A stretch of 64,000 nt of DNA from Podarcis erhardii (lineage: Eukaryota). The stretch lies in the NCBI GenBank assembly GCA_964252035.1, contig OZ176209.1, one strand, 5' to 3'. Positions 10,288 through 61,937 of this stretch are shown piece after piece. Made by a program: the position numbers and the translations under genes. Below the pieces are notes generated by a model. The model was not told the origin of the DNA. It made no database searches and saw only the letters and a list, made by a program, of their open reading frames with translations. Numbering within the stretch: the stretch's first letter is position 1; each line of letters starts with the position of its first letter.

Positions 10288-11040
10288 TGTGTGACATCAT
10301 ACTGGGTCATAAGGAAAGGGTTAAGGTAAAGGTAAAGGGACCCCTGACCATTAGGTCCAGTTGTGACCGACTCTGGGGTTGCGGCGCTCATCTCGCTTTA
10401 TTGGCCAAGGGAGCCAGCATACAGCGTCATGTGGCCAGCAGACTAAGCCGCTTCTGGCAAACCAGAGCAGCGCACGGAAACGCCGTTTACCTTCCCGCCG
10501 GAGTGGTACCTATTTATCTACTTGCACTTTGATGTGCTTTTGAACTGCTAGGTTGGCAGGAGCTGGGACGGAGCTCACCCCGTCGCTGGGATTCGAACTG
10601 CCGACCTTCTGGTGTAAAATGACTAACCAATAGGAACCCAAGGGAAGGTGTTAGAGTTAGAGTTGTTAAGAAGTCAGTCTGGAGTTAGAGAAGAGATAGA
10701 GAGGATAAGTCTGTGGGTTGGGCTAGACTGATGTGAGAGAGTGAGAGAATCTGTTAAGAGGAGTCAGTCAAACAGTTGATATAATCAGTCAGAAGGCATT
10801 AGGAAGGTATAGGCCGGTAAAGAAACTAAAGTTAAGAAACTGACAAGAATATTATCTGAGAAACCATAAACTTGTTAACGCTTATAAAATAAACTTGTTT
10901 ATTTGGTTCAATTTTAATAACTGTCTGGACTCAGTGTGTACCCGAGAGTAACGTGTTGGTGGCAGTGGGAAAGCGGGCACAGTGGTGGCACAGGGATCAA
11001 TAGACCGTCAAACGTCCGGGGACCCTGTGTGATCGCCACA
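10288..11040 (+). mobile_element. Solo LTR (Gypsy-like) carrying a Sauria SINE, nested in a hAT element
   Basis: TGTG...CACA termini, flanks TAGC/CAGC (4-bp TSD with one mismatch), AATAAA at ~10888. Confidence 0.6.
10323..10611 (-). mobile_element. Sauria SINE (5'-truncated)
   Basis: (AAAGGT)n tail and GGACCCCTGACCATTAGGTCCAG... body shared with five other copies. Confidence 0.9.
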
Positions 11041-14620: not shown

Positions 14621-14912
14621 GGGATGTGGGTGGCGCTGTGGGTTAAACCACAGAGCCTAGGGCTTGTTGATCAGAAGGTTGGCGGTTCGAATCCCCGCGA
14701 CAGGGTAGATAAATAGGTACCGCTCCGGCGGGAAGACAGATGGTGTTTCTGTGCGCTGCTCTGGTTTGCCAGAAAGCGGCTTAGTCATGCTGGCCACATG
14801 ACCCGGAAGCTGTACGCCGGCTCCCTTGGCCAATAAAGCGACATGAGCACCGCAACCCCAGAGTCGTCCACGACTGGATCTAACAGTCAGGGGTCCCTTT
14901 ACCTTTACCTTT
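14621..14912 (+). mobile_element. Sauria SINE (internal deletion)
   Basis: tRNA-like head with B box GGTTCGAATCC and (ACCTTT)n tail. Confidence 0.9.
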
Positions 14913-18169: not shown

Positions 18170-18321
18170 NNNNNNNNNNNNNNNNNNNNNNNNNNNNNNN
18201 NNNNNNNNNNNNNNNNNNNNNNNNNNNNNNNNNNNNNNNNNNNNNNNNNNNNNNNNNNNNNNNNNNNNNNNNNNNNNNNNNNNNNNNNNNNNNNNNNNNN
18301 NNNNNNNNNNNNNNNNNNNNN
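18170..18321. other. Assembly gap (152 N)
   Basis: Run of N bases. Confidence 1.
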
Positions 18322-27275: not shown

Positions 27276-27637
27276 GGTAAAGGTAAAAGGTAAATGTACC
27301 CCTGACCGTTAGGTCCAGTTGCGGACAACTCTGGGTTTGCGCGCTTATCTCGCTCTATAGGCCGAGGGAGCTGCCGTTTGTTCACAGACAGCTTCTGGGT
27401 CATGTGGCCAGCATGACTAGGCTGCTTCTGGTGAACCAGAGCAGTGCACAGAAATGCTGTTTACCTTCCCGCCGGAGTGGTACCTATTTATCTACTTGCA
27501 CTTGTCATTTTTTCGAATTGCTAGGTGGGCAGGAGCTGGGACCAAACAACAGGAGCTCACCCCGTCACGGGGATTCGAACTGCCGACCTTCCAATCAGCA
27601 AGCCCTAGGCTCTGTGGCTTAGACCACAGCACCACCC
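27275..27637 (-). mobile_element. Sauria SINE flanked by (ATT)n on both sides
   Basis: Full body and head present. ATT tracts on both sides are consistent with a TSD in a microsatellite. Confidence 0.9.
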
Positions 27638-28850: not shown

Positions 28851-29609
28851 TCCAAGTGACAAGAGTAATAAAGGTGCTTGCAAATGTATATACTGAAAGT
28901 TATCACTTAGGAGTTGCTTCCTGATAAATCTGGAAAGAAACTAATCTTGCAGCAATCTGGAGGAGAGTTTACATGACCACAAAATGTTTGGCGCATTTGC
29001 AGCTAAAGTGTCTTTTAGACTCCATGTTGTCTGTGTGCATGTTTAATTTGCTCAGCTTCAGGTTCTACCAGAACCTCCAGCAAATTATATGTTCCAGTGG
29101 CAGTCATCTCATACTTAAATATTATGACACCAATTCACAACAGGTGAAATGAATTAAGTGGCAGAGCATGGAGTGCTATCCAACAGAAGGCTGAATGAGT
29201 ATTTATCTTAGCAAGGGATGATTCTGAGTGATGGGAAGCGATGGCAGGACTCTGATAATCAACACTCAGCAAAGGGCTCTCCAGCTGATTTTTTGAAACT
29301 AGGAAATCATCTGTGTTGTATGAAGAGTTTCTGCCAGTAGCTAATTTGATAAACAGTGGTTCCTGGGCTCAGAGTTGTCTCTGGGTCAAACTAGACTGGT
29401 ATGCTTGGTTTTGAGTCACTAAAAAGCACTGATAGGAGTGGGGATTTAATCCTTTGTCTCTCAATAGAAGCCAGGCTCATAGTAATGGCATACGCTGCAC
29501 ATGTTCAGAAATACTATTGTTCCCTTTCCATATTCTATAATTGAACCTTAGCATTCCCCCCCCCTCTCTCTTAAAATGAAAACTCTGACCAGGACTGAGC
29601 TTAGGTTAA

Positions 29610-29952
29610 GGACCCCTGACCATTAGGTCCAGTCGTGACCGACTCTGGGGTTGCGGTGCTCATCTCACTTTATTGGCCAAGGGAGCTGGCGTACAGCTTC
29701 CAGGCTATGTGGCCAGCATGACTAAGCCGCTTCTGGTGAACCAGAGCAGCGCACAGAAACGCCGTTTACCTTCCCACCGGAGTGGTACCTATTTATCTAC
29801 TTGCACTTTGACATGCTTTTGAACTGATAGGTTGGCAGGAGCAGGGACCGAGCAACGGGAGCTCACCCCGTCGCAGGGATTCAAACTGCCGACCTTCTGA
29901 TCGGCAAGTCCTAGGTTCTGTGGTTTAACCCACAGCACCACCCGTGTCCAGT
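29610..29952 (-). mobile_element. Sauria SINE with 9-bp TSD TTAGGTTAA
   Basis: TTAGGTTAA at 29601-29609 and 29953-29961. Confidence 0.9.
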
Positions 29953-32249: not shown

Positions 32250-34020
32250 CCCGCCCCTTCTGAATCAACCTCAGGCAGCTTCTCCCCCGCGTTTAGACTC
32301 CCGACGGGTTTCCATCCAGGTGCGCGCGGAAGGGTGGGGGCAAGTTAAGCGCAGCGACGGCTGGCGCCCATTGGGACTGGTAGGACGGAAGGCAGGGAGA
32401 CCACCAGCAGGGGGCGCCAGAGCCAACGGCAGACGGCGCCCCCTGATTCCAGTGTTGCCCCCGCGCTCCTCCCTGCTGCTCGCCACAGCCCGCTGCACTG
32501 GCTCCTCTAAGTCAGAAGGCAGCCAGCAGCGGCGGCGGCGGAGCCTGGCTGAGGGCAGACTGCGGCTGGCAGGGTCCCGCTGGCCCGAATGGCGTATTCT
32601 TCTTCCGCGAGCAACAGCTCGTCTGTCTGCCAGGCTTAAGCTCCCGGCAGCACCTCCTGCTGCGGAGAAGCGAAGCCTGAGGAGGAGCAGCCACAGATAC
32701 CAGCAGCCGGAGTCGCCGCCGCGTCCCGCTCCCGCCCGGTCTGGAGCCTTTGGCTCCTGTGCCGTCGAGGAGCCTGAGGCGGGGAGGTGTTCGAAGGCGC
32801 CTCCTTCCCGCCTCCCGCCGGCGCCTCCTCATTGGCCGCCGCCCGCCGCCTCCCCCACGTCGCCGTCGCCGCCCTCAAACCCGCCGCCTTCTCTCGCTCT
32901 TTGGAGGCTGCCTGCGAGGAGGAGCCGGGGGCAGTGAGCGCCGGCGGCGGAGGCGGCTTGGCGACCGAGGAGCCCTGAGGAGAAAGAAGGAGCCTGTGCG
33001 CGCGCGTCGTGTGAGGGAGCGAGCGAGCGAGCGAGCGACACAAGGCTGCCCGCTTCCCCTCCGCCGGGTCGCCTCGCGCCCTCCATTGTCTCTCTCCGCC
33101 GGGTTCCCTCCAACAGGTTCTGGGGCTGAGGCGCTTCTCGCGGCTTCCGGCTTTGGCGCCATTCCGCGCCCTTTTCGCGCCTCCGGGCGGCGGCGGCGGC
33201 GGCGGCTGAGGCGCCTCAGAGATGGTGCTGCTGCGGGCTGGGGAGGACTCGACTCGCGGCGCCGCCTCCTCCTCCTCCTCCTTCGCCCGGTGGATTCTGG
33301 CTTTTTGCTGAGGGAGGGAAGAAGGAGAAGGAGAAGGAGAAGGACGCCGAGGGGTGTGTGGGGAAGAAGACTGGGGCGTTCGGCTGCTTGGCTTTCCTTC
33401 AGACCCGGCTTCTGCCTCGAGGACTATGGAGTGATTCTGGGCGCCGCCGTCCTCGCGCGCGATGGAGTCCCCTGGCTGCTGCTGGAGCGCCCTGGGCTTC
33501 TTCCTCTTCTGCCTGAGCTCAGGTGAGACTCGAGCGGGGCGTTCCAGGCTCCAGCCTCTCCTTAAGGCATGCGGGGGGGGGGGGGGGCGGGCGTCTCGGG
33601 GTGTGTCTCTCAACCTCCCCCTTCCCCACCCCGAGGGGGAATCGGCTCAGTATGGGCAGGTGGGGGAGAGGGAAGACGGAGGATCCGGGCAGGAAAACGA
33701 GCGGAGAACTTTGCGAAAGGGATGCTGCCAAAGTAGGTCATGTAAATAGGACTGGCTGGTGCGGGAGATACCTGCGCCTTCCAGAACGGGAGTGGCAGCA
33801 GGATCGGGGTGGGAAAAGAAGGAGGAGGGTTGGGGGGGGGGAAGGTGGAGAGGAAAAGTTAGGGGATTCGGTAGTAATTTCTCTTTTCTCTTCCCCTCCT
33901 GGATCCAGCGGTCGGCTTTGGCGTGGACCCCTCGCTGCAGATCGACGTGCTGGGCGAGTTGCAGCTGGGGGAGTCGGTGGCCGGAGTGGTGCAAGTGCAA
34001 GGGCTGCACAACGGGAGCAA
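32250..34020 (+). promoter_or_regulatory. CpG island / main NELL2 promoter, 5'UTR, exon 1 to exon 2
   Basis: Very GC- and CpG-rich compared with CpG-poor flanks. Contains (GGC)n, (CCT)n and (GAGC)n runs and overlaps the first coding exons. Exact TSS not determinable. Confidence 0.85.
33462..33522 (+). CDS. NELL2: NELL2 coding exon 1 (signal peptide MESPGCCWSALGFFLFCLSS)
   Basis: ATG at 33462 in strong context (GCGATGG), hydrophobic N-terminus, donor CAG|GTGAGA at 33523. Phase 1, which joins exon 2 in frame. Confidence 0.9.
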
Positions 34021-34037
34021 AGCTTTCTTCTTCCAAG
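33909..34037 (+). CDS. NELL2: NELL2 coding exon 2 (AVGFGVDPSLQIDVLGELQLGESVAGVVQVQGLHNGSKAFFFQ)
   Basis: Pyrimidine tract + CCAG acceptor, donor AAG|GTATGG, 129 nt. Closely matches vertebrate NELL2 'GLGVDPSLQIDVLTELELGES...GLHNGTKAFLFQ'. Confidence 0.97.
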
Positions 34038-35874
34038 GTATGGGACCTCCATCCATCCAGGGGTGCCAACTTGAATAAAATATTGGGTGGGGGAGGGAAG
34101 TGCCGCCCCACACAATCCATCACAGGATATGGCACACACACACTATTTGAATGGCAATTCCCATCAACTTTTTTGGGGGGGACAGGGCCCCCCTCCAATA
34201 TTTTATTGTTGGTGGGAGGGACCCCAAAGGGGGCTCTGTCCCTAGGAGTTGGCTCCTATGCATGCATCCATCCTTCCTCATTCTCGCTTTGGCTCCTGGG
34301 CTGGCTCTGCGGGCAGGGTCAGCCCAGGCCACCTGAATAATTCCTGAACTTGCTGGCAAATGCGTTTGATCGAACTTTTTTGCATTAACCGGATGGCAGG
34401 CGATGCTCCTCTGGGCTCGCGATGCGACTTGGTCCATTTGCTCAGCGAGGCTCCTGCCTGCCTGCTCTGTTAAGCCTCGCTGATTCCTCCCCTCCCTCCT
34501 TCAACTTTTGTCTCTCTACTGTCACTTTTCTGGCCCCTCTTTTGATGGATAGGCCTTAATTAATGGTCAGCAGGAAAGCTGATGGCAGATGGCTTATTTT
34601 GCCAGGCGTGGGGAGCCCTGAATAATAAACAGATTCGTCTGGGCTGCCTGAGATTGGTTTATTTGGGAAGACACGCCAGGCTAAGCTCTTGTTCTCGCTG
34701 ATGGTTAGAGGAGAAAATAAGACTAGGGAGAAAATATGAAACAGAGTGTGAATAAGTGGGGAATGGGGATAACATACTGCATTTTTCCCCATTAAAAATA
34801 TCTGCAGGAAAAATATAGAAGCCCTTGCAAAAAGATTTGTTAACAGTTTATATACCCTTTATCCTTGTTAAATTTTGAACTTTTTGGGGGGTGGGTGGGA
34901 ATTCTTTGTGTACACAATGGGTGGTATAGTCATACTCAGAGTAAACCTATTGAACGTAAGTAACAAATCCATGACTTTCATGAGTCCGTTCTGAGTATGA
35001 CTTAGTTAGCTAATCACCCACTAATTTTAAGGATTTTTAATAAATCTAAATGTTCCTTCCAAGAATAAGGAGGCAGCTGTCTTTTGATTCGATTTTGCAT
35101 TAATATATTCAAAGACACTTCTAATGTAGGATTCCAAAAAGCAGCATTTATTTCGTGCAGTTTATAGTCTATTGTATAAAGGTAAAATATTCTGAGATAA
35201 ATGTTTTCCCCCATCCCTTGTATGTGAAAAAGATTACATACAGAATTAGATTTTTAAATCACAATGCAGAACATTTCTGAAGCTTATCAGACTGTTCATT
35301 TAAAAGAGGGCTGATATCATAGTGGCGTTGGGAAGGAAATGGAACAATGTTGCATGTGCGTGCTGAATGTTGCTATGTAAAGTTTGAGAACATGGTTCAC
35401 ACGGTGAATTAAGAAGAATTTTAATTTGCTTCTATATAGCCCATAGTCTATGTGTATCATTTGTTTTCTTAGGAGTTCCAGTTATAGGGTTTTTTAAATT
35501 TTTTTCTTTTAGTACAAGAGGCAAAGGGAGGCCTTGCAAAGAAGCTGTAATTTAAGGAAAAATCCAGGCAATGCTGTTGGCTTGAACTTCTGAATCAATA
35601 AGATCATGTATCAAAAGCTGACTACCTGAGTCACTGGAGGACTCTGTGGAGGGATGTTATTCTACATTCAACCAGAGTGTGTCACTGTGACCATTAACAC
35701 AGAAAAGTCAGAGCATACACTTTTAAAAAGAGAAATTGACACCTGCTATTTTTAAACAGAAAAAGCCTTCTTTCAACAGGATGTAGACATCTACATGAAA
35801 GGGCTCTTGACAGAATAAAAATCTAAAATTCCAATTTTGAGGCTAATAATATGAACATTTCAGGACTGCACATA

Positions 35875-51900: not shown

Positions 51901-53646
51901 CTTCATGTAATCAATCATGATGCTTGATTAAAAGAACCTTCAAAACAGTGCACACTCATCCCTCCCATCTTGAAGGACAAACACCCCTTCCTATGACAGG
52001 TCTTACTTAACTGGTTCTCACTAGCACTGGCCTTGAAGGACCTGCACTTGGTGTCAGTGCCTAGGAAATTCAACCTGGAGAGGTTCACAGCATCAACATC
52101 CCAAAAGGCTCTTGTTTATCCCATAGCTGCAGCCTTGGATACAAACACAATCATGCATTCATCTCTCTGCTCTTTTGCTGCTTTTCTTCTAGCTCATGCC
52201 ACTGAACTCTCAGTTCTTGTCTTTGTTCTTTTTCTAACTACCATCCAGTTGAGGACCCCTTTGTTGTCTCACACAGATCCATTCCTTTGTTCCCCTTAGT
52301 GGCCCATCACCCAGGTAATCACCTCATCTGTAAGCTAGCCTTGCTTATATTTTAACACTAACCCTGGATCCCAGGGTTTGAAAGGTCTTGGCATACAGCC
52401 TACTCCCTATACCCAAACTCATAACAATATTGTGGTGACGTGGGCAGTCCATGCTTAAGGTAGAATACAGCATAATTTAAGAATTACAGTCTTCCACAAC
52501 AATTTCTAACTGCAAAATTACATGCCTCCTTAAATATTTATAAACACTAGTGCTTATTAGAAAACATACTATTTAAAATTTTAATGCTTTTGATTTGAAT
52601 TGTGGATTTTATTCTTCATTCTTTGCAAAACGTAAAGTACCATTGTGCTTTGTAGAAGTTTGTTGCATGTTAAGACCTTGAGGTGAAAGACATTTCTCTG
52701 TGTGTGTTTTTCCTTCCGTCCTTTGGGGAATAAATTGTTTATATTGCCAGAAATTGTTAGTGCACATCAAACCATCATACAGAATACAAAAGCGTGTTAC
52801 TTGAGTCTTAATATGCCATGGCTAAAAAAGAAAGAACACTGGGAAGTAATTGTATTTGAGTTGCTTCATAATTTATTAAACACTTCCATTAAATGGTAAA
52901 GATGTATTGCATTCAAAGAACCATATGAGCCAAAGCAGCAAGGATAATAAAAGTATTCAAAGTTTTTAAACTATCAGTTTTAATTTGATATTCTTTCAAA
53001 AATGAAATGCTTAAGTATTCTCAGTTGGGCTAAATCCATCCTTGGTGATCTCTAGAAAGAATTGGCTCTCATAAATAGTGCCATTTTATGCTCAGATTTT
53101 AACAATAGATTTCTCTGTAAGTCTTTAGAGACTTTAATTGACAGGATAACATTTTATTCTTCGGTATAAATACAAGACTATGTGAATCCACACTAAAAGC
53201 ATGTAATGGTTTGGTCCAAAAGATGGTTGACAGCTTTGTGGGACTGAATTATCAGTTGAGTAGTTACTGGGCTACATCCAACAGCATTGCTCAGCTGATG
53301 TTGAGGTTTCTATCAATGGAAGAATGGGAAAACTAATTCCAGAGATTTCTGTTCTCTTGCTCCTCTCTTACACACACCTAAATATCATCTATAGGGTCCC
53401 CCAACACCCTGGAGCAGATCTGGGGAATGCAGAGACTGAAGGCAAGGGGGGGGTAGATGGTAATTGCTGCTTCCCCTATTTGTTGATGGAAGCACTACTG
53501 TCATCTGAGTTACATTGTGGAATACTATACAAACTACAGTTTCAAAGTTTAATCAACTGTAAATATTTGTCTTCATGCTTAGTACTACTGATACATAGAG
53601 TACATTTGGTAAAAAAAAGCAACTCTCATTTTTTGTTTCATTCTAG

Positions 53647-53797
53647 GTGCTTCAAGAAATGTAAAAGCATCTCCAGAGAAAGCAGAACTCTTTTTTCAGA
53701 AGCTAAGAAATAAACATGAATTCACAATTTTGGTGTCACTCAAACAAACTCGCTTAAATTCAGGTGTTATTTTTTCTGTTCACCACTTAGATCACAG
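53647..53797 (+). CDS. NELL2: NELL2 coding exon 3 (GASRNVKASPEKAELFFQKLRNKHEFTILVSLKQTRLNSGVIFSVHHLDHR)
   Basis: TTCTAG acceptor, CAG|GTAGGT donor, 151 nt. Matches NELL2 'FFQKLRNKHEFTILVTLKQTHLNSGVILSIHHLDHR' in the TSPN/LamG domain. Confidence 0.97.
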
Positions 53798-56600
53798 GTA
53801 GGTGCAGATACCTAATATTTATTGTTTTTTGCTGGCATGCTGAAATGTGAAATAAGATTAAAATAAACCAGAAAGAGAAACCTGAGATTAATATGCAGCA
53901 TAACCCAATGCATTTATACTCAAGAGGTAAACCCCACTGAGTTCAGTGGGACTTACTTCCAGGTAAAAGTGTATAGGACTGCTGCTTTATGCTGTGATAC
54001 TAAGCATATCTATGTAGAAATGAATTTTGTGGAAGCAGATTGGAGTCACTTTCCACTAATTATATGATTGGAATATTAGCTGACATATATGCAACACTAC
54101 TTGGAAATTACTGTGGCTCATATGACTGTGAATAATGTAAATAGATGGAAATTCACAAGTTAAGATCTATCAACAGATTATATAACTAGTATCTATCAAC
54201 AGCTGTCACCATTTAAATGTCTCCCACTGCTAAGGGCATAAAAAGTTTTCCTACCATTTGCCTGTCACACTACTGTGGATCTCATCCTTATCTAGTGTAA
54301 ATCAGCTCAACCTCATTGCCTGTAAAAGACCTGTGCTATTTCACAGCATCTGTTGCCTTACCTGTGTGCCTTCTTACTATTTGCCTCACTTTCAAACAGT
54401 GAAGACTATCCAAGGTTACAGAAATAACAGCGATAGTAATAAATGGAAAAGCAATGCTGTTTGGTTTAAGGAAAGCAATGCTGTTAGGTTTAAGAGACTA
54501 AACTATGTGACCTGAGGGCATTTGAGAATGATTTCATCATGATACGACAAGAAAATTGTTGTCACAGTTAAAAGAGGTGTTATTAAGATTGTTACGCATC
54601 TGCTGCAGCTGCTGAAATAGTCAACATATGACCCTAGCAAAGAATTGTCAACAATGATCCATGAAACGATATGAATTTTCAACTCAAACTTCAAGCTCCT
54701 ATAGCATCTCATTGAAACAAATGGGTTTTGCTGCCATTAAGTAGCATATGATTGGCAACTGAGCTTTCATTGCTGTAATAGGGACATTTTCATTCTTTCT
54801 AACAGACTATGGGAAAGTTAAACTACCTTTAACTATGGTAGGGATGGTGTATACCTTTTATGTTATTACTGTTGAACAACTTTATATTGTATCTCACAGG
54901 GATTATAATGATTGTTAACATGGTAATTTTAAATTAAGTGTTAAAAGCTCCTTAGAGTGCCTCTTAAATTTATGTTGTCAATTGTACATGCGAAACAAGA
55001 GGAACAATGGCAGAACCTTTCTAAGAAGCTGTTTTTGTAAGAATTCAAGTCATTTGAAATTGGTACAGTTGGTTTGGCTAGAACTTTGTACATGCTTACG
55101 TAAGCAGATGCCTGAAGATATAGAAAGTTTTTCATCACAGGTCCATATCATATTTAATAACATTTTAGCATCTTTCAGATAATGCAGAGTAGCAGTGAGC
55201 TCGAAAGGCACACCACATCCAACATAGCTGGGACTATTATAATCCCAGAAAGAAGATGGTCATGGTATAGGGATACTTTGGGCTTTAGCGGCACATCCTG
55301 AAAATATTATTGGAGTTTTATTGAATTTTCTTGGTGGGTTAAATTTCTCAATTCAGTCCCTCAAAGAATTAAAACAAATATTCAGAACATGCTCCTGTAG
55401 AGGTTTAGGCACATGATTTGTCTGATTTCTACTCAGAGGTAAGTGTCATTGACCTCAAGGAGGCTTACTCCCAGGTAGGTATGCATAGTAGGAGTAGGGA
55501 ACCTCAGGCTCAGGGTTGAATGTGGTCCTCCAGGCCTCTCCATCTTGCCACAGGCCACACCACTATGAATCCTTTTCTGTGCCCTCTTTGAATATTTGTT
55601 CTTGCTTGGAAAGCCACTTGCCGTGTGGATGGAAGATAGAGATGTGCGTGTGTATAAATCTGTGACTTTTGTTTGTTTGGAATATAGCCTGCTGTACAAA
55701 GGTAAAAGTTGGAATAGAAACCAATATAGCTCACCTACTCCCTACCTGTGAATGTGAGTAACTCCCAGAGCAAAATGTTAGGTCTGCTGCCACCAGCCCT
55801 CTTGTTTTCTCTCTGTCCTTGAATCTCTCAAGTCAATGAGAGATTGATTTTATTTAGGGAATTGTGGGAGTTTCCGCTTCCCTTCAGGGATGGGTCCAGG
55901 GAATCTAGGCACAGTGGGGAGAACACGGTCAGTCATGTGGAGCCACAAATTCACATCAAATGTCAGCAAACCATTTTAAGAGAGTTTATGAAGAATAAGG
56001 TTAAGAAGACAAAAGGGAAAAGGCAGGACAGCTTATACAACAAAATAAATACACATTTTAAATAGAATAGAATAGCTGATGGGGAAGTTGTTTGAAAGTC
56101 AGCCTTGAGAACTCCAGTTCTTGCAACACCTACTGTACACTTTGGGCCCACCCACTTTGACATGCAGCCCCTGGAGACCACACCCACTTTGACCATGCAG
56201 CCCATGGGTAAATGTGTCCCTTGGCCTGAGAGAGTTTAGCTACCCTTGCTGTAGAGCTTGTAGACCTGGCTCAGCCCACTGTCTAATTATGATAATGTGC
56301 TTAAAAAATATATCTCCCAGTGGCCTTCTTCAGACTCTTACTGGGCTGGTTCCACAATATGTATGGTAGAGGTGTGGTTGTGTGCAATGCCCGTCTTACA
56401 TGGGTATAGTATGAAATGTCAAGTGGGCAGTTCACCTAAGGGCAGTATGTTCAACAGCCCATTTTTCTTTGTTTTGGGGTAGGAGCGGGAAAGTGTATAA
56501 ATCAGACCATAACACGTATGGGCTTTCATGTGCAACACCCATGTCACATGTGATTAAGAGGTGGGACACACCTGTATTCTCCTTCACTATGTGAGTCACA

Positions 56601-57034
56601 GGACAATTGAAGTAAGGGTCCAAACTGGACCTACATTCTCATGTGCACTAGTGTCAGATATGGGACAATTGCAAGCGGTTCAAAATATGGTAGCATAGAT
56701 GAAATTATAATTATAATAAGTTAGAAATTATAATTCAACAAAACAAGATTAGTATCAACAAGATTAGTATTAGTGTAAATCATATTATTAGGACGATGAT
56801 GGCAAGACAGACTACGCAGAAAGTCAGTCTTGCCATCATCGTCCTAATAATATGATTTACACTAATACTAATCTTGTTGATACTAATCTTGTTTTGTTGA
56901 ATTATAATTTCTAACTTATTATAATTATAATTTCATCTATGCTACCATATTTTGAACCGCTTGCAATTGTCCCATATCTGACACTAGTGCACATGAGAAT
57001 GTAGGTCCAGTTTGGACCCTTACTTCAATTGTCC
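56601..57034. repeat. Perfect long inverted repeat (208-bp arms, 18-nt spacer) in NELL2 intron 3
   Basis: 56601-56808 is the exact reverse complement of 56827-57034 (checked base by base). Spacer AGACTACGCAGAAAGTCA. Confidence 0.98.
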
Positions 57035-58386
57035 AAGTGAAGCTATAACATAAAAACTATGAATACAGCTTCTGATTAATGAAAGCATCTTAAGCTGTGT
57101 TGAATGAAATACGTTTTATTAGAATCTAACCAAGTACGATCTCTTAATTATATACAAATTAATGATTGCCACCAATTGCTCCTCTATTACACTGAACCAT
57201 GGAGTGTGAATCTATTATCCATTTTGTGTGATTTCCTCATTAATCTTTCATCTTGTTGTTCATGATAAGAGGTCATCAGTACTAATAAATGTTAATCCCA
57301 ATGCCCTAAGAAATCTTTGTGGATTTTGGTTTAAATAATGAGTGCAAATGGGTGAAGAACTTTTCCCTTCAGATGAGCAAATAAGAAAATGAGAAATTAG
57401 AAAAACTTCAAACATAGACTATATGTTTTGAGTTGAATACTTATTTTATTAAATGATGCTAGTCAGAAACAGTGAGCTCATTGAACTGCAAATGTGCTCA
57501 ACTTATGACTGTGCTTGTACAGTTTATTCATATCTACTGAAGGAAAAACTGAAGTAAATACTTGCTTTGGTATTTAGATACATGGTTACAGCAGAAAAAA
57601 ACAATATAAATATGTAAAAGGTTTTGGCGTAAAGTAGGGGGTAGATATCTAAAGTGTACAAGACCACTTGCTCCAAAATAAGTAAATAGATTTGGATTTA
57701 GAAGTGGGTATGATTTGCCATAGTCCTCATTATTTTCCTGCTGTTTCTGCTTCATTACCTGATCGCTTATAGTTTACAAGCAACATACCACAGCTACTTT
57801 ATTTATTACTTGAATCTTGTAAGTTCCATCCAAAGAAGTAACAATGACATCAATTTCTTTTTGTCTTTTTCATCTAATATTTTCTTATCACTCAGTTTTA
57901 ATAGCATAAGCATCAACCAGATTTCTTTAGTCATTTGGGCAACTGTTTGATCATTCTTGAACATTCTTGACACCGTGAGTAGTGGAAATGTGTTGAAGCA
58001 GTTAAAATAAGTATTTGTTTTCTGTTTAACCTTGTCAAGTTGGAATAACCCCAAATATTGGTTATAAAGCAGGTCATTAAATTGATGGATGTCCTGCTAT
58101 ATTTCTCTGGGTTTTTTCCAGGCAGCTAGGCTTCATTTAATTTTTAAAATTCTTGTCAGTGCACAAAATGAATTCTGGCAATATGGTGTAAATTATTCCA
58201 GTTTTTAAAACTTCCCATGAGCAAACACTTTAATGAGTTATATTTACCGGCCCACCTTCTGTATGAAGGTTCAGAAGTTACTCAGAATTTGCTGATGCAA
58301 CAAAAATATCATGGGTTCGGGCTAGATTTCACCTCTAGTCATCAGAAAGGCTCTTATTTATAGAAGGCTTTTGATTCAGTAGAATG

Positions 58387-58387
<1 letters not shown>

Positions 58388-58420
<33 letters not shown>
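58388..58420. repeat. (GT)n microsatellite
   Basis: Seen directly in the sequence. Confidence 0.95.
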
Positions 58421-58424
<4 letters not shown>

Positions 58425-58505
58425 TTTGCTGATCCCGCACACTCTAACACTGTTCTATGGCACCTAACCCTCTGGAACAGCATGGGAGGTGGTTCTGTGA
58501 CTCTA

Positions 58506-58856
58506 GGTAAAGGTAAAGGGACCCCTGACCTTTAGGTCCAGTCGTGACCGACTCTGGGGTTGTGGCGCTCATCTCGCTCTATTGGCCGAGGAAGCCGGCG
58601 TACAGCTTCTGGGTCATGTGGCCAGCATGACTAAGCCGCTTCTGGCGAACCAGAGCAGCGCACGGAAACGCCGTTTACCTTCCCACCGGAGCGGTACCTA
58701 TTTATCTACTTGCACTTTGACTTGCTTTTGAACTGCTAGGTTGGCAGGAGCAGGGACCGAGCAACGGGAGCTCACCCCGTTGCGGGGATTCGAACTGCCG
58801 ACCTTCTGATCGGCAAGTCCTAGGCTCTGTGGTTTAACCCACAGCTCCACCCACCC
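58506..58856 (-). mobile_element. Sauria SINE, full length, TSD TCTGTGACTC
   Basis: TSD at 58494-58503 and 58857-58866. CpG-rich body. Confidence 0.92.
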
Positions 58857-59689
58857 TCTGTGACTCCAGAGGGAAGGCCAAAAGTTATCTACCACCTCTC
58901 TACCAGCAGGAACATCTGCAGAGAGGAACTCTACTTAGATCATGCTCCCAGTAGTTGAGATACCCCCCCTTTAGCATTGTATTGACATTGTGTTTTAAAG
59001 AGAAAGTTTATTTATAAGTATAATTTATGCAGGTCAGACACGAAGCCAAATTGTAAAATTTCATTCTTTCAAGTTCTTGCTTAAAATTGTTCTCTAATGG
59101 TAGACTCCAGTCACATTTGAGGGTATATTAGAGTTTTGGAAAAGAACATGTAGAATAAAAAAATAGATCTTAGCAAATGCTAAGCTTGTGAAGATTTGCA
59201 TACTTTGCCTTCATCGGTTTTTGCCTGCATTGCATGGTTGTTGTTTTTTAGTAATCTCACTTCTGAACAAATCACCAGTTAGGAGAAATAGAATTCACTC
59301 ATCTGTAGACACTTTTTTGCCACTTTCTTTCTAGCTTCCATTTTTGTAAAAAGCAGCAGCAGCAGCAGCAAGCTACAGAATAATAATTTGGGGGGAAATT
59401 AAAAGCAAGTTTGAAAAATTAAATGAAAATATCAATCTTTTAAAAATAGTTCTCTCAAAGCTGAATTTCAGAAATGGAGTTCAAAAATCTTTGAAAATGC
59501 TGGAATATTGCTGAATTTTGGATTTTAAAAATTGAATTTTACTTCTGCTCTAGTATAAAGTTTTGAGCCAATAGAATTTCCATATTAAGCATCCATGAGA
59601 AAAAGCAACACAAGTAAAAGGGAAATGGAAGATGCAAAAACCTAGTCATGTCAAGTAAAAACAGAATAAAGGCTATTTAGGTGTGATTT

Positions 59690-59758
59690 CTGCATTTCAG
59701 GGGTTTGGACCATATTACCATTGGGGTCCCTTCAGACTCTATAATTCAATGATCCTAC
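59690..59758 (+). mobile_element. CR1-type SINE tail only
   Basis: TTCTGCATTTCAGGGGTTTGGAC...GGGGTCCCTTCAGACTCTATAATTCAATGATCCTA resembles the shared tail. No head recognised. Confidence 0.6.
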
Positions 59759-60878
59759 AAATTATCATTATTATTATTTCCTTTGTTCTTATGCTTGGTG
59801 GGGTAGGGAGCTGGATCTGGCTGCCAAATTCTGACTTTTCCAAACTAACCACTACCTCTATCATGGTATCAGGTGAAGTGTTTTCATTTGCCCTTACAGT
59901 TTGAAATCAAGCAGCACAGGCAGAGGAAAAGGGTTTTGCACATGCTGCTGACCAGTACCTGTGAACTGTGCTTTTGGTAAAGGGCTGCATCTTTATATGC
60001 CTGCAAGTGATATCATATATGATGTTAGGTGTAGGGCAAGGGTTGGGGGAAATGGCCTTTGAGATTAACTAGACCAATGGGTAGAAGATTCTGCACCTCT
60101 GCTTTAAATAGAAAGATTAGTTTAGGAGTCACTGATACTATTGCACAGCCATGATAATCCATGAATCTATATTATATTCAAGGGGTATAGGAGCTCATTC
60201 ACCATTCAGTCAGACTGAGAGGTGCATGTTTTTTGCACTGCTCCTGTAGATAATTCACTACTAGTTCATGTGAACACAATTAAAGGGGCTAGATTATTTT
60301 GTCGTAATGCCATATCTCTGTTGTTAGCGCTCAGAGTTATGAATAGTTCTGCTTAATTTTGCATTGTTTCACATGTTAATTTTAAATAAATTGATAATTA
60401 AGATGTGAAGAGTGCTTTGGCCTATTCTATCACTGTCTTGTTTTGTTTTATTAAAAATTGCCTTATTTCAATCCTTTTAAGATTGTGGTGATAAAAGAGG
60501 TAATTCAATTGGCATATGTTTTGTCAACTCTACTATTTTGTTTGCAGATATATATAAATTCAGTTGGTTTTGACTTCTTGCCAGTGCAATAAAAATTGGC
60601 CACAGAACAAAGAATTATTGCATGCATAACTTTTGTTGCTGACTTCAGTTAAGTGTTCATTAATACAGAGACTAGAGTGCTTTGAGACACCTTGAATGTT
60701 GAAGAGAAAATAAATGCACTTTGCTAGGTGTGCAAAACAAGTCAGAAATGCCTGAATTTTCCTGTTAGCTGGGAATGCTTCTTTGAAGAGAGAAGTGCAG
60801 AAATAAAAGAAAGGCATATGGTGCTGCTTTTCTAAGGAGATTTTTAACTATATATGTATATTTCAATAAAGGGAAATA

Positions 60879-61120: not shown

Positions 61121-61542
61121 TACAAATACTGGAATCAACAGGAATGTTGTTCCACAAAATGGGGGCTGTCACACTGAAAGCCTGTTGTCCGTAAAGAAAA
61201 CCCAACACATGGTGTCTTGCTCATATATAGGGGCTCTGCACGATGGAGGCATCTTCATGTATCATAATCATGGCAGAGGCTCTACTCAAAAGCAGGAGCT
61301 TGCTCATTGCATTTTCTTTACAGACAACTGTGCACAATGTGCTGTGGTTGGAGGAGGAAGAAGACATCACATCAGGGGAAGGGCTAAAAGTGGGACCCCA
61401 TCCAAGAGGCAACAAAATCATGCCTTCGATGTGAATAATGTATAAATTGGATTTTCTCTTGTTTCTGTTTATAAACCAGTATGAATTCTGTTTCCTCCTT
61501 ATTAACATTGCTTCATGAATTGATGATCCATTTCTGGTGCAG

Positions 61543-61716
61543 GTACTTGGAACTAGAAAGCAGCGGCCATAGAAATGAAATTAGATTGCACTACCGTTCA
61601 GGAAGCCATCGCTCACATACGGAAGTGTTTCCTTACATATTGGCAGATGACAAGTGGCACAGGCTCTCTTTAGCAATCAGTGCATCACACCTCATTTTGC
61701 ATGTAGACTGCAATAA
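61543..61716 (+). CDS. NELL2: NELL2 coding exon 4 (YLELESSGHRNEIRLHYRSGSHRSHTEVFPYILADDKWHRLSLAISASHLILHVDCNK)
   Basis: TGCAG acceptor, AA|GTAAGT donor, 174 nt. Near-identical to the NELL2 LamG segment; phase continues from exon 3. Confidence 0.98.
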
Positions 61717-61840
61717 GTAAGTGAAGAGTTGTGTTTCAATTGCTTGAAAGTGCTGCAGCATTTTAGATCATTACTGGATAGTATGAAAGTAATTTCTTGT
61801 TCTTTTTTACTTTGCTCCTGTTCTCTCATTTAAAAAACAG

Positions 61841-61937
61841 AATTTATGAGAGAGTGGTGGAAAAGCCTTATCTGGATTTACCTGTTGGCACAACCTTTTG
61901 GTTGGGACAAAGGAATAGTGCACATGGTTACTTCAAG
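61841..61937 (+). CDS. NELL2: NELL2 coding exon 5 (IYERVVEKPYLDLPVGTTFWLGQRNSAHGYFK); gene continues past window end
   Basis: CAG acceptor, AAG|GTATGT donor, 97 nt. Matches NELL2 'IYERVVEKP..DLP.GTTFWLGQRN.AHGYFK'. Confidence 0.97.

What the first reader, a model, noticed from the sequence alone, without database searches (positions are those of the whole stretch)
56601..57034. Perfect 434-bp palindrome (208-bp arms, zero mismatches, no TSD) inside NELL2 intron 3
Seen: the two arms are exact reverse complements. The 18-nt spacer pairs further (GACT/AGTC after one A-A mismatch), leaving an 8-nt loop. The arms are AT-rich and hold short internal duplications (GGACAATTG x2, CAAGATTAGTAT x2, AAATTATAATT x2). 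The flanks (GTCACA| and |AAGTGA) share no direct repeat. All other long inverted repeats in this window have diverged arms. Inference: a transposon young enough for identical TIRs should still show its TSD, so this is more likely a very recent fold-back or template-switch duplication, arm-to-arm gene conversion, or an assembly chimera. If real, every NELL2 pre-mRNA would fold a ~210-bp perfect dsRNA stem (an ADAR or Dicer substrate), and the DNA could extrude a cruciform and act as a fragile site.
Basis: partly seen in the sequence, partly recalled or inferred. Interest (0 to 1): 0.8.

Follow-up and report, generated by a model that had tools for sequence, protein, structure and literature searches.

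The report
Lineage-specific inverted duplication in NELL2 intron
The perfect 434-bp palindrome is real, but it is not a transposon or an assembly error: one lizard lineage copied about 219 bp of its own intron backwards next to the original, a known kind of copying slip that makes a long hairpin in one step.

Summary
Arms 56601-56808 and 56827-57034 are exact reverse complements. The 18-nt centre forms a 4-bp stem, one A-A mismatch and an 8-nt loop. There is no TSD.

Contigs from public runs settle the origin. In the same species (X1) both junctions and the centre sit at 1x depth and the arm at 2x. So the palindrome is real, looks homozygous, and has no further genomic copies.

In three related species (1.0%, 1.1% and 2.3% diverged) a single contig spans the locus with only one arm, at single-copy depth. 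That arm is followed by the reverse complement of this genome's loop, about 21 nt that this genome lacks, and then the right flank.

The palindrome is therefore a derived inverted duplication of local single-copy intron DNA. It fits one template switch: a 219-nt copied fragment, a 2-nt filler and a 4-nt GTCC microhomology at the return.

- **MITE, Penelope fold-back, assembly chimera:** tested and rejected.
- **Gene conversion:** not needed. Zero differences in 208 bp has P of 0.10-0.23 even for the oldest possible date.
- **PATRR membership:** fails. It is 67% AT with an asymmetric, GC-richer centre, so strong cruciform fragility is doubtful.
- **dsRNA, editing or small-RNA role:** untested.

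The scan noted other perfect palindromes in this genome, mostly Penelope or hammerhead type. This one is a different kind. It is a long, clean member of a known mutation class.

The parts
56601..56808 (+). Left arm. This is the original single-copy intron sequence, continuous with the left flank in all species examined.
   Evidence: single contigs of X4, X5 and X13 run from the left flank into the arm at 1x depth. In X1 the arm is a separate 208-nt unitig at 21.9x, against 9.4-11.4x in the flanks.
56705..56719 (+). A 15-nt stretch (TTATAATTATAATAA) present in both arms here (mirror copy at 56916-56930) and absent from all three relatives. This indel is older than the inverted duplication.
   Evidence: table 4 (X13: 15 left out at 56703) and table 8 (pieces of X4 and X5 jump from 56704 to the equivalent of 56720). 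Letters read.
56809..56809 (+). Position x. It forms the A-A mismatch with 56826 and is the only non-complementary position outside the loop. It is either an error of the copying synthesis or a later substitution.
   Evidence: The ancestral letter was not obtained.
56810..56815 (+). GACT is the last ancestral letters kept on the left side (switch point 1). The following 2 nt, AC, match neither template and act as filler.
   Evidence: Inference. The relatives' alignment to the inverted copy stops at 56816, and their sequence after GACT reads as the reverse complement of 56816-56821.
56816..57034 (-). The new DNA: a 219-nt reverse-complement copy of the ancestral arm plus the 11 nt that followed it (fragment 2 to 3 of the four-point model).
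   Evidence: table 8. In X4, X5 and X13 this stretch aligns on the opposite strand to the rest of the same contig and lies directly next to the left-arm piece. It is therefore the relatives' single arm plus the next 11 nt.
57031..57034 (+). GTCC, a 4-nt microhomology at the return switch. It is both the end of the inverted copy and the ancestral sequence just before the right flank.
   Evidence: The right-flank alignments of all three relatives start at 57031, not 57035. The chance of a 4-nt match is about 1/256.
53661..53796 (+). Upstream NELL2 exon (approximate ends), peptide ...KHEFTILVSLKQTRLNSGVIFSVHHLDHR.
   Evidence: Motifs recalled from memory were used only as a lead. Exon ends were not mapped.
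61541..61717 (+). Downstream NELL2 exon, residues 91-149 of the solved NELL2/NEL chains, part of the laminin-G/TSPN domain.
   Evidence: Protein NEL E 1.4e-34; NELL2 E 1.1e-33. (Laminin_G_2, 24.2 bits against a cut-off of 22.9).

Best explanation
This is a lineage-specific inverted duplication of local intron DNA, made in one step by a local template switch. The ancestral locus read: left flank, arm, x, GACT, TTCTGC, about 21 nt, GTCC, right flank. During synthesis of the + strand the polymerase left its template just after GACT and added two untemplated letters (AC). It then copied the opposite strand backwards from 11 nt beyond the arm to the arm's outer end, 219 nt in all. It returned to the original template through the 4-nt GTCC microhomology just before the right flank, so the TTCTGC and about 21 nt that followed GACT were replaced. 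In the four-point notation the order is 3-1-2-4. Point 2 lies ahead of point 1, so the switch was to the other parental strand rather than a snap-back on the nascent strand. Shown here: the arm is ancestral and single-copy, the second arm is new, the loop is inverted relative to the relatives, and the flanks are collinear. Inferred: the polymerase route, and whether it was fork-associated or repair synthesis after a break. The product is probably a neutral structural variant, apparently homozygous in the one sample laid. Its expected consequences are a 208-bp perfect dsRNA stem in NELL2 pre-mRNA and hairpin formation on single-stranded DNA. Both consequences are untested.
For. (a) Same species, X1: the left-flank unitig ends 30 nt inside the arm. 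The arm is a 208-nt unitig at 21.9x. The centre unitig 56779-56856 is at 9.4x. The right-flank unitig starts 30 nt inside the arm at 11.4x. This is the graph expected for a real, homozygous palindrome with no extra copies. (b) X4, X5 and X13: one contig each holds the left flank plus arm, then the equivalent of rc(56816-56915), then 21 unaligned nt, then the sequence from 57031 onward. Depth on the arm equals flank depth (14.6 against 15.5; 75.5 against 79.7; 9.7 against 10.4). (c) Divergence from the window is 1.11%, 0.96% and 2.33%. X13 is therefore the outgroup under a clock, and it shares the single-arm state. No TSD and no other copy in the window. No hammerhead or other Rfam family reaches threshold. 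Literature: template switches create perfect inverted repeats in one event (PMC7954356, PMC10710096, PMC8794818). Lengths reach 128 nt in the great-ape gold-standard set (PMC7954356) and 318 bp in human haplotypes (PMC9435742).
Against: The letters of the relatives' 21 nt and of position x were not seen, so the four-point alignment is reconstructed from piece coordinates rather than read base by base. The AC filler and the A-A mismatch are not explained by pure templating. Polarity rests on a clock-based rooting and on mechanistic parsimony, not on a named outgroup. All read evidence is Logan contigs. X1 may be the very sample that was assembled, so no independent individual of this species has been seen. 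At 219 nt the copied fragment is longer than most reported local template switches.
Confidence: 0.8

Rival explanations
1. Same product, different route. A double-strand break in the roughly 21-nt region was repaired by microhomology-primed synthesis on the broken partner end, followed by end joining. On this reading there was no fork-associated template switch.
For: The 2-nt filler and the 4-nt microhomology are as typical of polymerase-theta or alt-EJ repair and MMBIR as of fork switching. The copied fragment ends only 11 nt past the arm, as it would for run-off at a broken end. Fold-back priming at breaks is documented (PMC10622511, PMC7467729, PMC3907307).
Against: Nothing in the sequence separates this route from the replicative one. 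Both ends of the locus are retained and collinear, which needs second-end capture.
Confidence: 0.3
2. The palindrome is ancestral and the relatives lost one arm, which is the known fate of unstable palindromes.
For: Short asymmetric PATRR alleles are deletion derivatives of long symmetric ones (PMC1851657). The tree of the four species was not rooted with a named outgroup.
Against. All three relatives, including the one about twice as diverged, share the same single-arm structure. That structure has an inverted loop and about 21 extra nt. A deletion cannot produce these; it would also need an inversion and an insertion. The forward direction needs only one switch event.
Confidence: 0.06
3. It is a transposon-type insertion: a long-TIR MITE or fold-back element, or a Penelope-type fold-back insertion like others noted in this genome.
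For: Earlier scan notes list several perfect palindromes in this genome attributed to Penelope or hammerhead elements. The overall shape is similar.
Against: There is no TSD. No hammerhead or other ribozyme hit appears even at E up to 1. Arm depth is exactly 2x in X1 and 1x in the relatives, and no other contigs at 90% identity or more were laid on it. The relatives' site is not empty: it holds one arm, continuous with the flank.
Confidence: 0.02
4. It is an assembly or polishing artefact, such as a missed-adapter chimera or arms homogenised by polishing.
For: Palindromes are a known artefact class of long-read libraries. X1 may come from the same sample as the assembly.
Against. The X1 k-mer graph carries the left junction, centre and right junction at full single-copy depth and the arm at twice that, with zero differing letters. 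A chimera confined to a few reads would not reach 1x. The unique flanks on both sides also argue against a read-scale fold-back.
Confidence: 0.02

Closest known systems
Local template-switch mutations (TSMs; four-point model of Loytynoja and Goldman; Walker et al. 2021, PMC7954356; Loytynoja 2022, PMC9435742; Monttinen et al. 2022 and 2023, PMC8794818 and PMC10710096)
   Same: The descendant carries a reverse-complement copy of adjacent ancestral sequence. The flanks are collinear. A short stretch is replaced. A perfect hairpin-forming repeat arises in one event, inside an intron.
   Different: The copied fragment is 219 nt. The median in the great-ape gold-standard set is 12 nt and the maximum 128 nt. 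The longest human pattern reported is 318 bp. There is a 2-nt filler and one mismatched position near the junction. The host is a lizard.
FoSTeS/MMBIR and fold-back inverted duplications (PMC3907307, PMC10622511, PMC7467729)
   Same: An inverted duplication with a short spacer, microhomology at a junction and possibly error-prone synthesis.
   Different: Those events span kilobases to megabases and often end in dicentric chromosomes or telomere capture. This one is 0.2 kb, interstitial, and keeps both flanks.
Human palindromic AT-rich repeats (PATRR11, 17, 22; PMC1851657, PMC4940405)
   Same: A near-perfect palindrome several hundred bp long. One of them, PATRR17, also lies in an intron (of NF1). 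The size of 434 bp is close to the 445 bp of PATRR11.
   Different: PATRRs are more than 90% AT and symmetric at the centre. This one is 67% AT, has an 8-nt loop plus a mismatch, and its central 60 bp are 47% GC. No rearrangement is known here.
Penelope-type fold-back insertions with hammerhead ribozymes, noted elsewhere in this genome by the scan
   Same: Perfect palindromes of 90-220-bp arms inside introns of the same genome.
   Different: Going by their first-reader titles, several of those sit between TSDs, carry hammerhead cores and come from a repeated element. This one has none of the three, and one of its arms is orthologous single-copy DNA.

Membership tests
Template-switch mutation (four-point model) | The descendant holds a reverse-complement copy (fragment 2 to 3) of nearby ancestral sequence. 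| tested here: met
   56816-57034 equals the reverse complement of the relatives' single arm plus the next 11 nt.
Template-switch mutation (four-point model) | Fragments L to 1 and 4 to R are collinear with the ancestral sequence. | tested here: met
   single contigs of X4, X5 and X13 carry the left flank plus arm, and the right flank from 57031, in the same orientation.
Template-switch mutation (four-point model) | The pre-event allele is present in outgroup lineages. | tested here: met
   species at 0.96%, 1.11% and 2.33% divergence are all single-arm. The rooting is by clock only.
Template-switch mutation (four-point model) | One event explains every difference in the cluster. | tested here: inconclusive
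   The AC filler (56814-15) and the A-A position (56809/56826) are left over. The relatives' 21 nt and position x were not read.
MITE or fold-back DNA transposon | Target-site duplication at both ends. | tested here: not met
   the flanks are GTCACA| and |AAGTGA.
MITE or fold-back DNA transposon | Many genomic copies, and an empty site in relatives. | tested here: not met
   the arm is at 2x in X1 (its own two arms only) and at 1x in the relatives. The relatives keep one arm.
Penelope-like fold-back insertion | Hammerhead ribozyme motif in the arms. | tested here: not met
   no hammerhead family matches at E up to 1 in 54000-60000.
Penelope-like fold-back insertion | The inserted DNA comes from a repeated retroelement and sits between TSDs. 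| tested here: not met
PATRR | A near-perfect palindrome several hundred bp long. | tested here: met
   434 bp with 208-bp exact arms.
PATRR | More than 90% AT. | tested here: not met
   the whole element is 32.7% GC and the central 60 bp are 46.7% GC.
PATRR | Central symmetry with no spacer. | tested here: not met
   the 18-nt centre has an 8-nt loop and one mismatch.
PATRR | The centre is a site of breakage or translocation. | not testable with these tools
   This needs population or sperm DNA assays.
miRNA precursor families (Rfam mir-4776, MIR946 and others) | Score at or above the family's gathering threshold. | tested here: not met
   51.9 against 97 bits, and 43.6 against 190 bits. These are generic perfect-hairpin matches on both strands.

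The most novel reading that the evidence does not exclude
The duplication is the birth of a new RNA element caught at its start. Every NELL2 pre-mRNA of this species would carry a 208-bp perfect duplex that its closest relatives lack. The duplex would be hyper-edited by ADAR or cut into small RNAs, and would measurably change NELL2 expression or splicing, or seed a species-specific miRNA or siRNA locus.
Probability: 0.1. Interest if true: 0.55.

Novelty: new member of a known kind. Interest (0 to 1): 0.3.

Why it matters
This is an unusually clean and unusually long natural example of a one-step hairpin-creating mutation. The before-state is preserved in three sister species and the after-state looks homozygous in the one sample laid. 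It shows that, in a genome where most perfect palindromes seem to come from Penelope-type insertions, some arise from the host's own DNA by template switching. It also offers a natural species pair, with and without a 208-bp intronic duplex in the same conserved neural gene. That pair could be used to ask what a long perfect intronic dsRNA does in a reptile (editing, small RNAs, splicing) and how long such a palindrome survives. It is not a new kind of element.

Tried and rejected
- **Extension of the palindrome into the flanks.** The 7- and 8-mers CTTCACT/AGTGAAG and CTGTATTC/GAATACAG looked suggestive. A local alignment of 600 nt per side scores no better than shuffles, so they are chance matches.
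- **Homology between the left flank and the arm interior.** Repeat D2 is 15 of 20 identical. It is not supported by blastn and is treated as chance.
- **Rfam.** Only sub-threshold miRNA-hairpin hits on both strands and a weak snoU13 hit. There are no tRNA-like sequences.
- **Penelope or hammerhead fold-back.** This lead came from earlier scan notes. It was tested and rejected on three counts.
- **Reading the relatives' junction letters.** Four look-ups of small flanking ORFs with the look-up of encoding contigs found nothing on record. Read laying and the look-up of sequencing runs each allow one call, so the 21 nt and position x stay unread.
- **Earlier notes at this place or by sequence.** Nothing was returned. 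A word search for NELL2 met no note.
- **Gene conversion between the arms.** Considered and set aside as unnecessary.
- **RNA evidence.** No listed run is on record as RNA and holds the stretch.

Full report
**1. The observation**

Positions 56601-57034 form a 434-nt palindrome.

- A base-by-base reverse-complement comparison finds non-complementary positions only at 56809/56826 (A opposite A) and in 56814-56821.
- The arms 56601-56808 and 56827-57034 are therefore exact over 208 nt. GACT (56810-13) pairs with AGTC (56822-25), and the loop is ACGCAGAA.
- The repeat finder reports the same object as 213-nt arms 8 nt apart.
- As single-stranded DNA it folds at -256 kcal/mol, against -39 +/- 4 for shuffles. 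As RNA it folds at -368 kcal/mol.
- The flanks carry no direct repeat. The inverted symmetry does not continue outward: the flank alignment scores 22 against a shuffle mean of 21.8.
- No other copy of the arm is in the window. Every other inverted repeat in the window is a dispersed pair at 67-90% identity, apart from two 34-36 nt low-complexity matches 19 kb apart at 97-100%.

**2. Gene context**

- The + strand open frame at 61541-61717 matches residues 91-149 of the solved chains named Protein NEL and Protein kinase C-binding protein NELL2 (E 1.4e-34 and 1.1e-33).
- The same frame passes Pfam Laminin_G_2.
- A + strand exon ending near 53796 encodes the preceding peptide. It was located with short motifs recalled from memory, used only as a lead.
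- The palindrome therefore lies deep in a 7.7-kb NELL2 intron, about 2.8 kb from the upstream exon and 4.5 kb from the downstream one. I did not verify that it is intron 3.

**3. The decisive evidence: public sequencing runs**

The look-up of sequencing runs found three groups of runs.

| Organisms | Share of the stretch's words |
|---|---|
| A (one sample) | 0.91-0.94 |
| B, C, D | 0.59-0.64 |
| E, F, G | 0.43-0.49 |

I laid the Logan contigs of X1 (organism A), X4 (B), X5 (C) and X13 (G) on 55101-58534.

*Same species, X1.* The contig graph is what a real palindrome gives at k = 31.

| Unitig | Window span | Depth |
|---|---|---|
| Left flank | ends at 56630, 30 nt into the arm | 9.4x |
| Arm (208 nt) | 56601-56808 | 21.9x |
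| Centre (78 nt) | 56779-56856 | 9.4x |
| Right flank | starts at 57005 | 11.4x |

There are no differing letters across the arm and centre unitigs. This gives three results.

- Both junctions and the centre exist in the reads at full single-copy depth, so the structure is not an assembly chimera. It is homozygous, or at least not heterozygous with a single-arm allele.
- The arm is present exactly twice, as its own two arms.
- No other contig at 90% identity or more was laid on the arm, so it is not a repeat family.

*Relatives, X4, X5 and X13.* In each, one contig spans the locus in four pieces.

| Piece (X4 and X5) | Orientation | Meaning |
|---|---|---|
| Left flank plus arm, to 56704 | as the flanks | arm continuous with the left flank |
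| 56816-56915 | opposite strand | by the palindrome's symmetry, the inner part of the same single arm, followed by the reverse complement of GCAGAAAGTCA |
| 21 nt | unaligned | DNA that this genome lacks |
| 57031 onward | as the flanks | right flank |

X13 shows the same layout with different piece ends (to 56761, then 56816-56856). Depth on the arm equals flank depth in all three relatives, so the arm is single-copy there.

The relatives therefore read: left flank, arm, x, GACT, TTCTGC, 21 nt, GTCC, right flank. This genome reads: left flank, arm, A, GACT, AC, GCAGAA, AGTC, A, rc(arm), right flank.

**4. Polarity**

- Differing letters per aligned base are 1.11% for X4, 0.96% for X5 and 2.33% for X13 (from table 8).
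- Sites shared by only two of the three relatives are few and conflicting. A, B and C are thus close to a star, and G is the outgroup under a clock.
- G shares the single-arm state.
- The relatives' allele cannot be derived from the palindrome by deletion alone. It would also need a loop inversion and a 21-nt insertion.
- The palindrome follows from the single-arm allele by one switch.
- I therefore take the palindrome as derived on the lineage of this genome.

**5. Mechanism**

In the four-point notation (PMC7954356), read left to right on the + strand:

- **Point 1:** synthesis leaves the template after GACT.
- **Filler:** two letters, AC, match neither template.
- **Points 2 to 3:** copying resumes on the opposite strand 11 nt beyond the arm and runs backwards to the arm's first base. 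This fragment is 219 nt and corresponds to window 56816-57034.
- **Point 4:** synthesis returns just before the right flank, where the ancestral GTCC equals the last four letters of the copy. All three relatives align from 57031, and a chance 4-nt match has P of about 1/256.

The order is 3-1-2-4. Point 2 lies ahead of point 1, so the nascent strand could not have served as template (the argument in PMC7954356). That implies a switch to the other parental strand.

The TTCTGC and the roughly 21 nt that followed GACT were replaced. The A-A position next to the junction is either an error of the copying synthesis or a later substitution.

A break-repair route (microhomology-primed synthesis plus end joining; PMC10622511, PMC7467729, PMC3907307) gives the same product. 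It cannot be separated from the replicative route on one allele.

**6. Age**

- At least 11 positions in about 3.2 kb differ from all three relatives (table 3). The lineage's own branch is therefore about 0.35-0.55%.
- If the duplication dated from the start of that branch, 1.5-2.3 differences between the arms would be expected, and P(none) is 0.10-0.23.
- Perfect arms therefore need neither a very recent date nor gene conversion.
- The 15-nt stretch 56705-56719 is absent from all relatives but present in both arms. That suggests the duplication came some time after the split.

**7. Rivals tested**

- **MITE or fold-back transposon:** no TSD, no extra copies, and the site in relatives is not empty.
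- **Penelope-type fold-back:** earlier scan notes list several such palindromes in this genome, so this was a serious lead. Here there is no hammerhead at E up to 1, no TSD, and one arm is orthologous single-copy DNA.
- **miRNA family membership:** only sub-threshold, strand-symmetric hairpin matches.
- **Assembly artefact:** see section 3.

**8. Consequences (inferred, not shown)**

- *RNA.* The intron is transcribed with NELL2, so the pre-mRNA should contain a 208-bp perfect duplex. From general knowledge, such duplexes are ADAR substrates. Processing into small RNAs is less certain in vertebrate somatic cells. No run on record as RNA holds the stretch, so this was not tested.
- *DNA.* The comparison with PATRRs is instructive. 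PATRRs are more than 90% AT and centrally symmetric (PMC4940405). A 9-nt spacer plus four mismatches abolished cruciform extrusion and instability of PATRR22 (PMC1851657). This element is 67% AT, has an 8-nt loop plus a mismatch, and its central 60 bp are 47% GC. Strong cruciform-driven fragility is therefore doubtful. Hairpin formation on single-stranded DNA during replication remains possible.

**9. Novelty**

Template switching that creates perfect hairpins in one step is established (PMC7954356, PMC9435742, PMC8794818, PMC10710096).

| Data set | Copied-fragment length |
|---|---|
| Great-ape gold-standard events (PMC7954356) | median 12 nt, maximum 128 nt |
| Human haplotypes, longest pattern (PMC9435742) | 318 bp |
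| This event | 219 nt |

This is a long but not unprecedented member of a known class, in a reptile, with both states preserved.

**10. Limits**

- All read evidence is contigs.
- X1 may be the assembled sample.
- The relatives' 21 nt and position x were not read.
- Rooting is by clock.
- No RNA data were available.
The N run at 18170-18321 was left untouched.

Noticed in passing
window 58436-58534; similar copies at 58505-58709, 14705-14910, 10323-10521, 29603-29800 and 27279-27495: An interspersed repeat of about 200 bp has at least five copies in the window at 80-90% identity. Its summed contig depth is about 2x10^5 in every species laid, with many contigs breaking at 58493-58509. It is a very high-copy element, probably a SINE or a LINE tail. 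No tRNA-like part was found in 54000-60000.
   Followed up: partly
window 56705-56719 (mirror copy 56916-56930): A 15-nt AT-only insertion specific to this lineage is absent from three relatives and present in both arms. It contains the self-complementary TTATAATTATAA and duplicates the nearby GAAATTATAATT. It may itself be a small slippage or template-switch event that preceded the large one.
   Followed up: partly
window 57803: The window has T where all four runs, including the same-species X1, have C (table 3). This is a private allele of the assembled haplotype or a consensus error.
   Followed up: no
window 55446-55560 and 55676-55790: Summed contig depth is 5-9 times the flank depth in all four species, with recurrent joints to the 58.5-kb repeat. 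These are moderately repeated elements in the same intron.
   Followed up: no
window 33878-34075, 53613-53798 and 61475-61916 (+ strand): NELL2 coding exons were recognised: the signal-peptide-proximal exon (…GFGVDPSLQIDVLGELQLGES…), the KHEFTILVSLKQ exon, the YLELESSG…HVDCNK exon, and a further piece with FWLGQRN in another frame at 61896-61916. Exon ends were not mapped.
   Followed up: partly
window 18170-18321: A run of 152 N, either an assembly gap or a masked stretch.
   Followed up: no
window 58365-58478: A weak snoU13-like Rfam match (20.3 bits against a gathering score of 46, E 0.62). Most likely chance.
   Followed up: no
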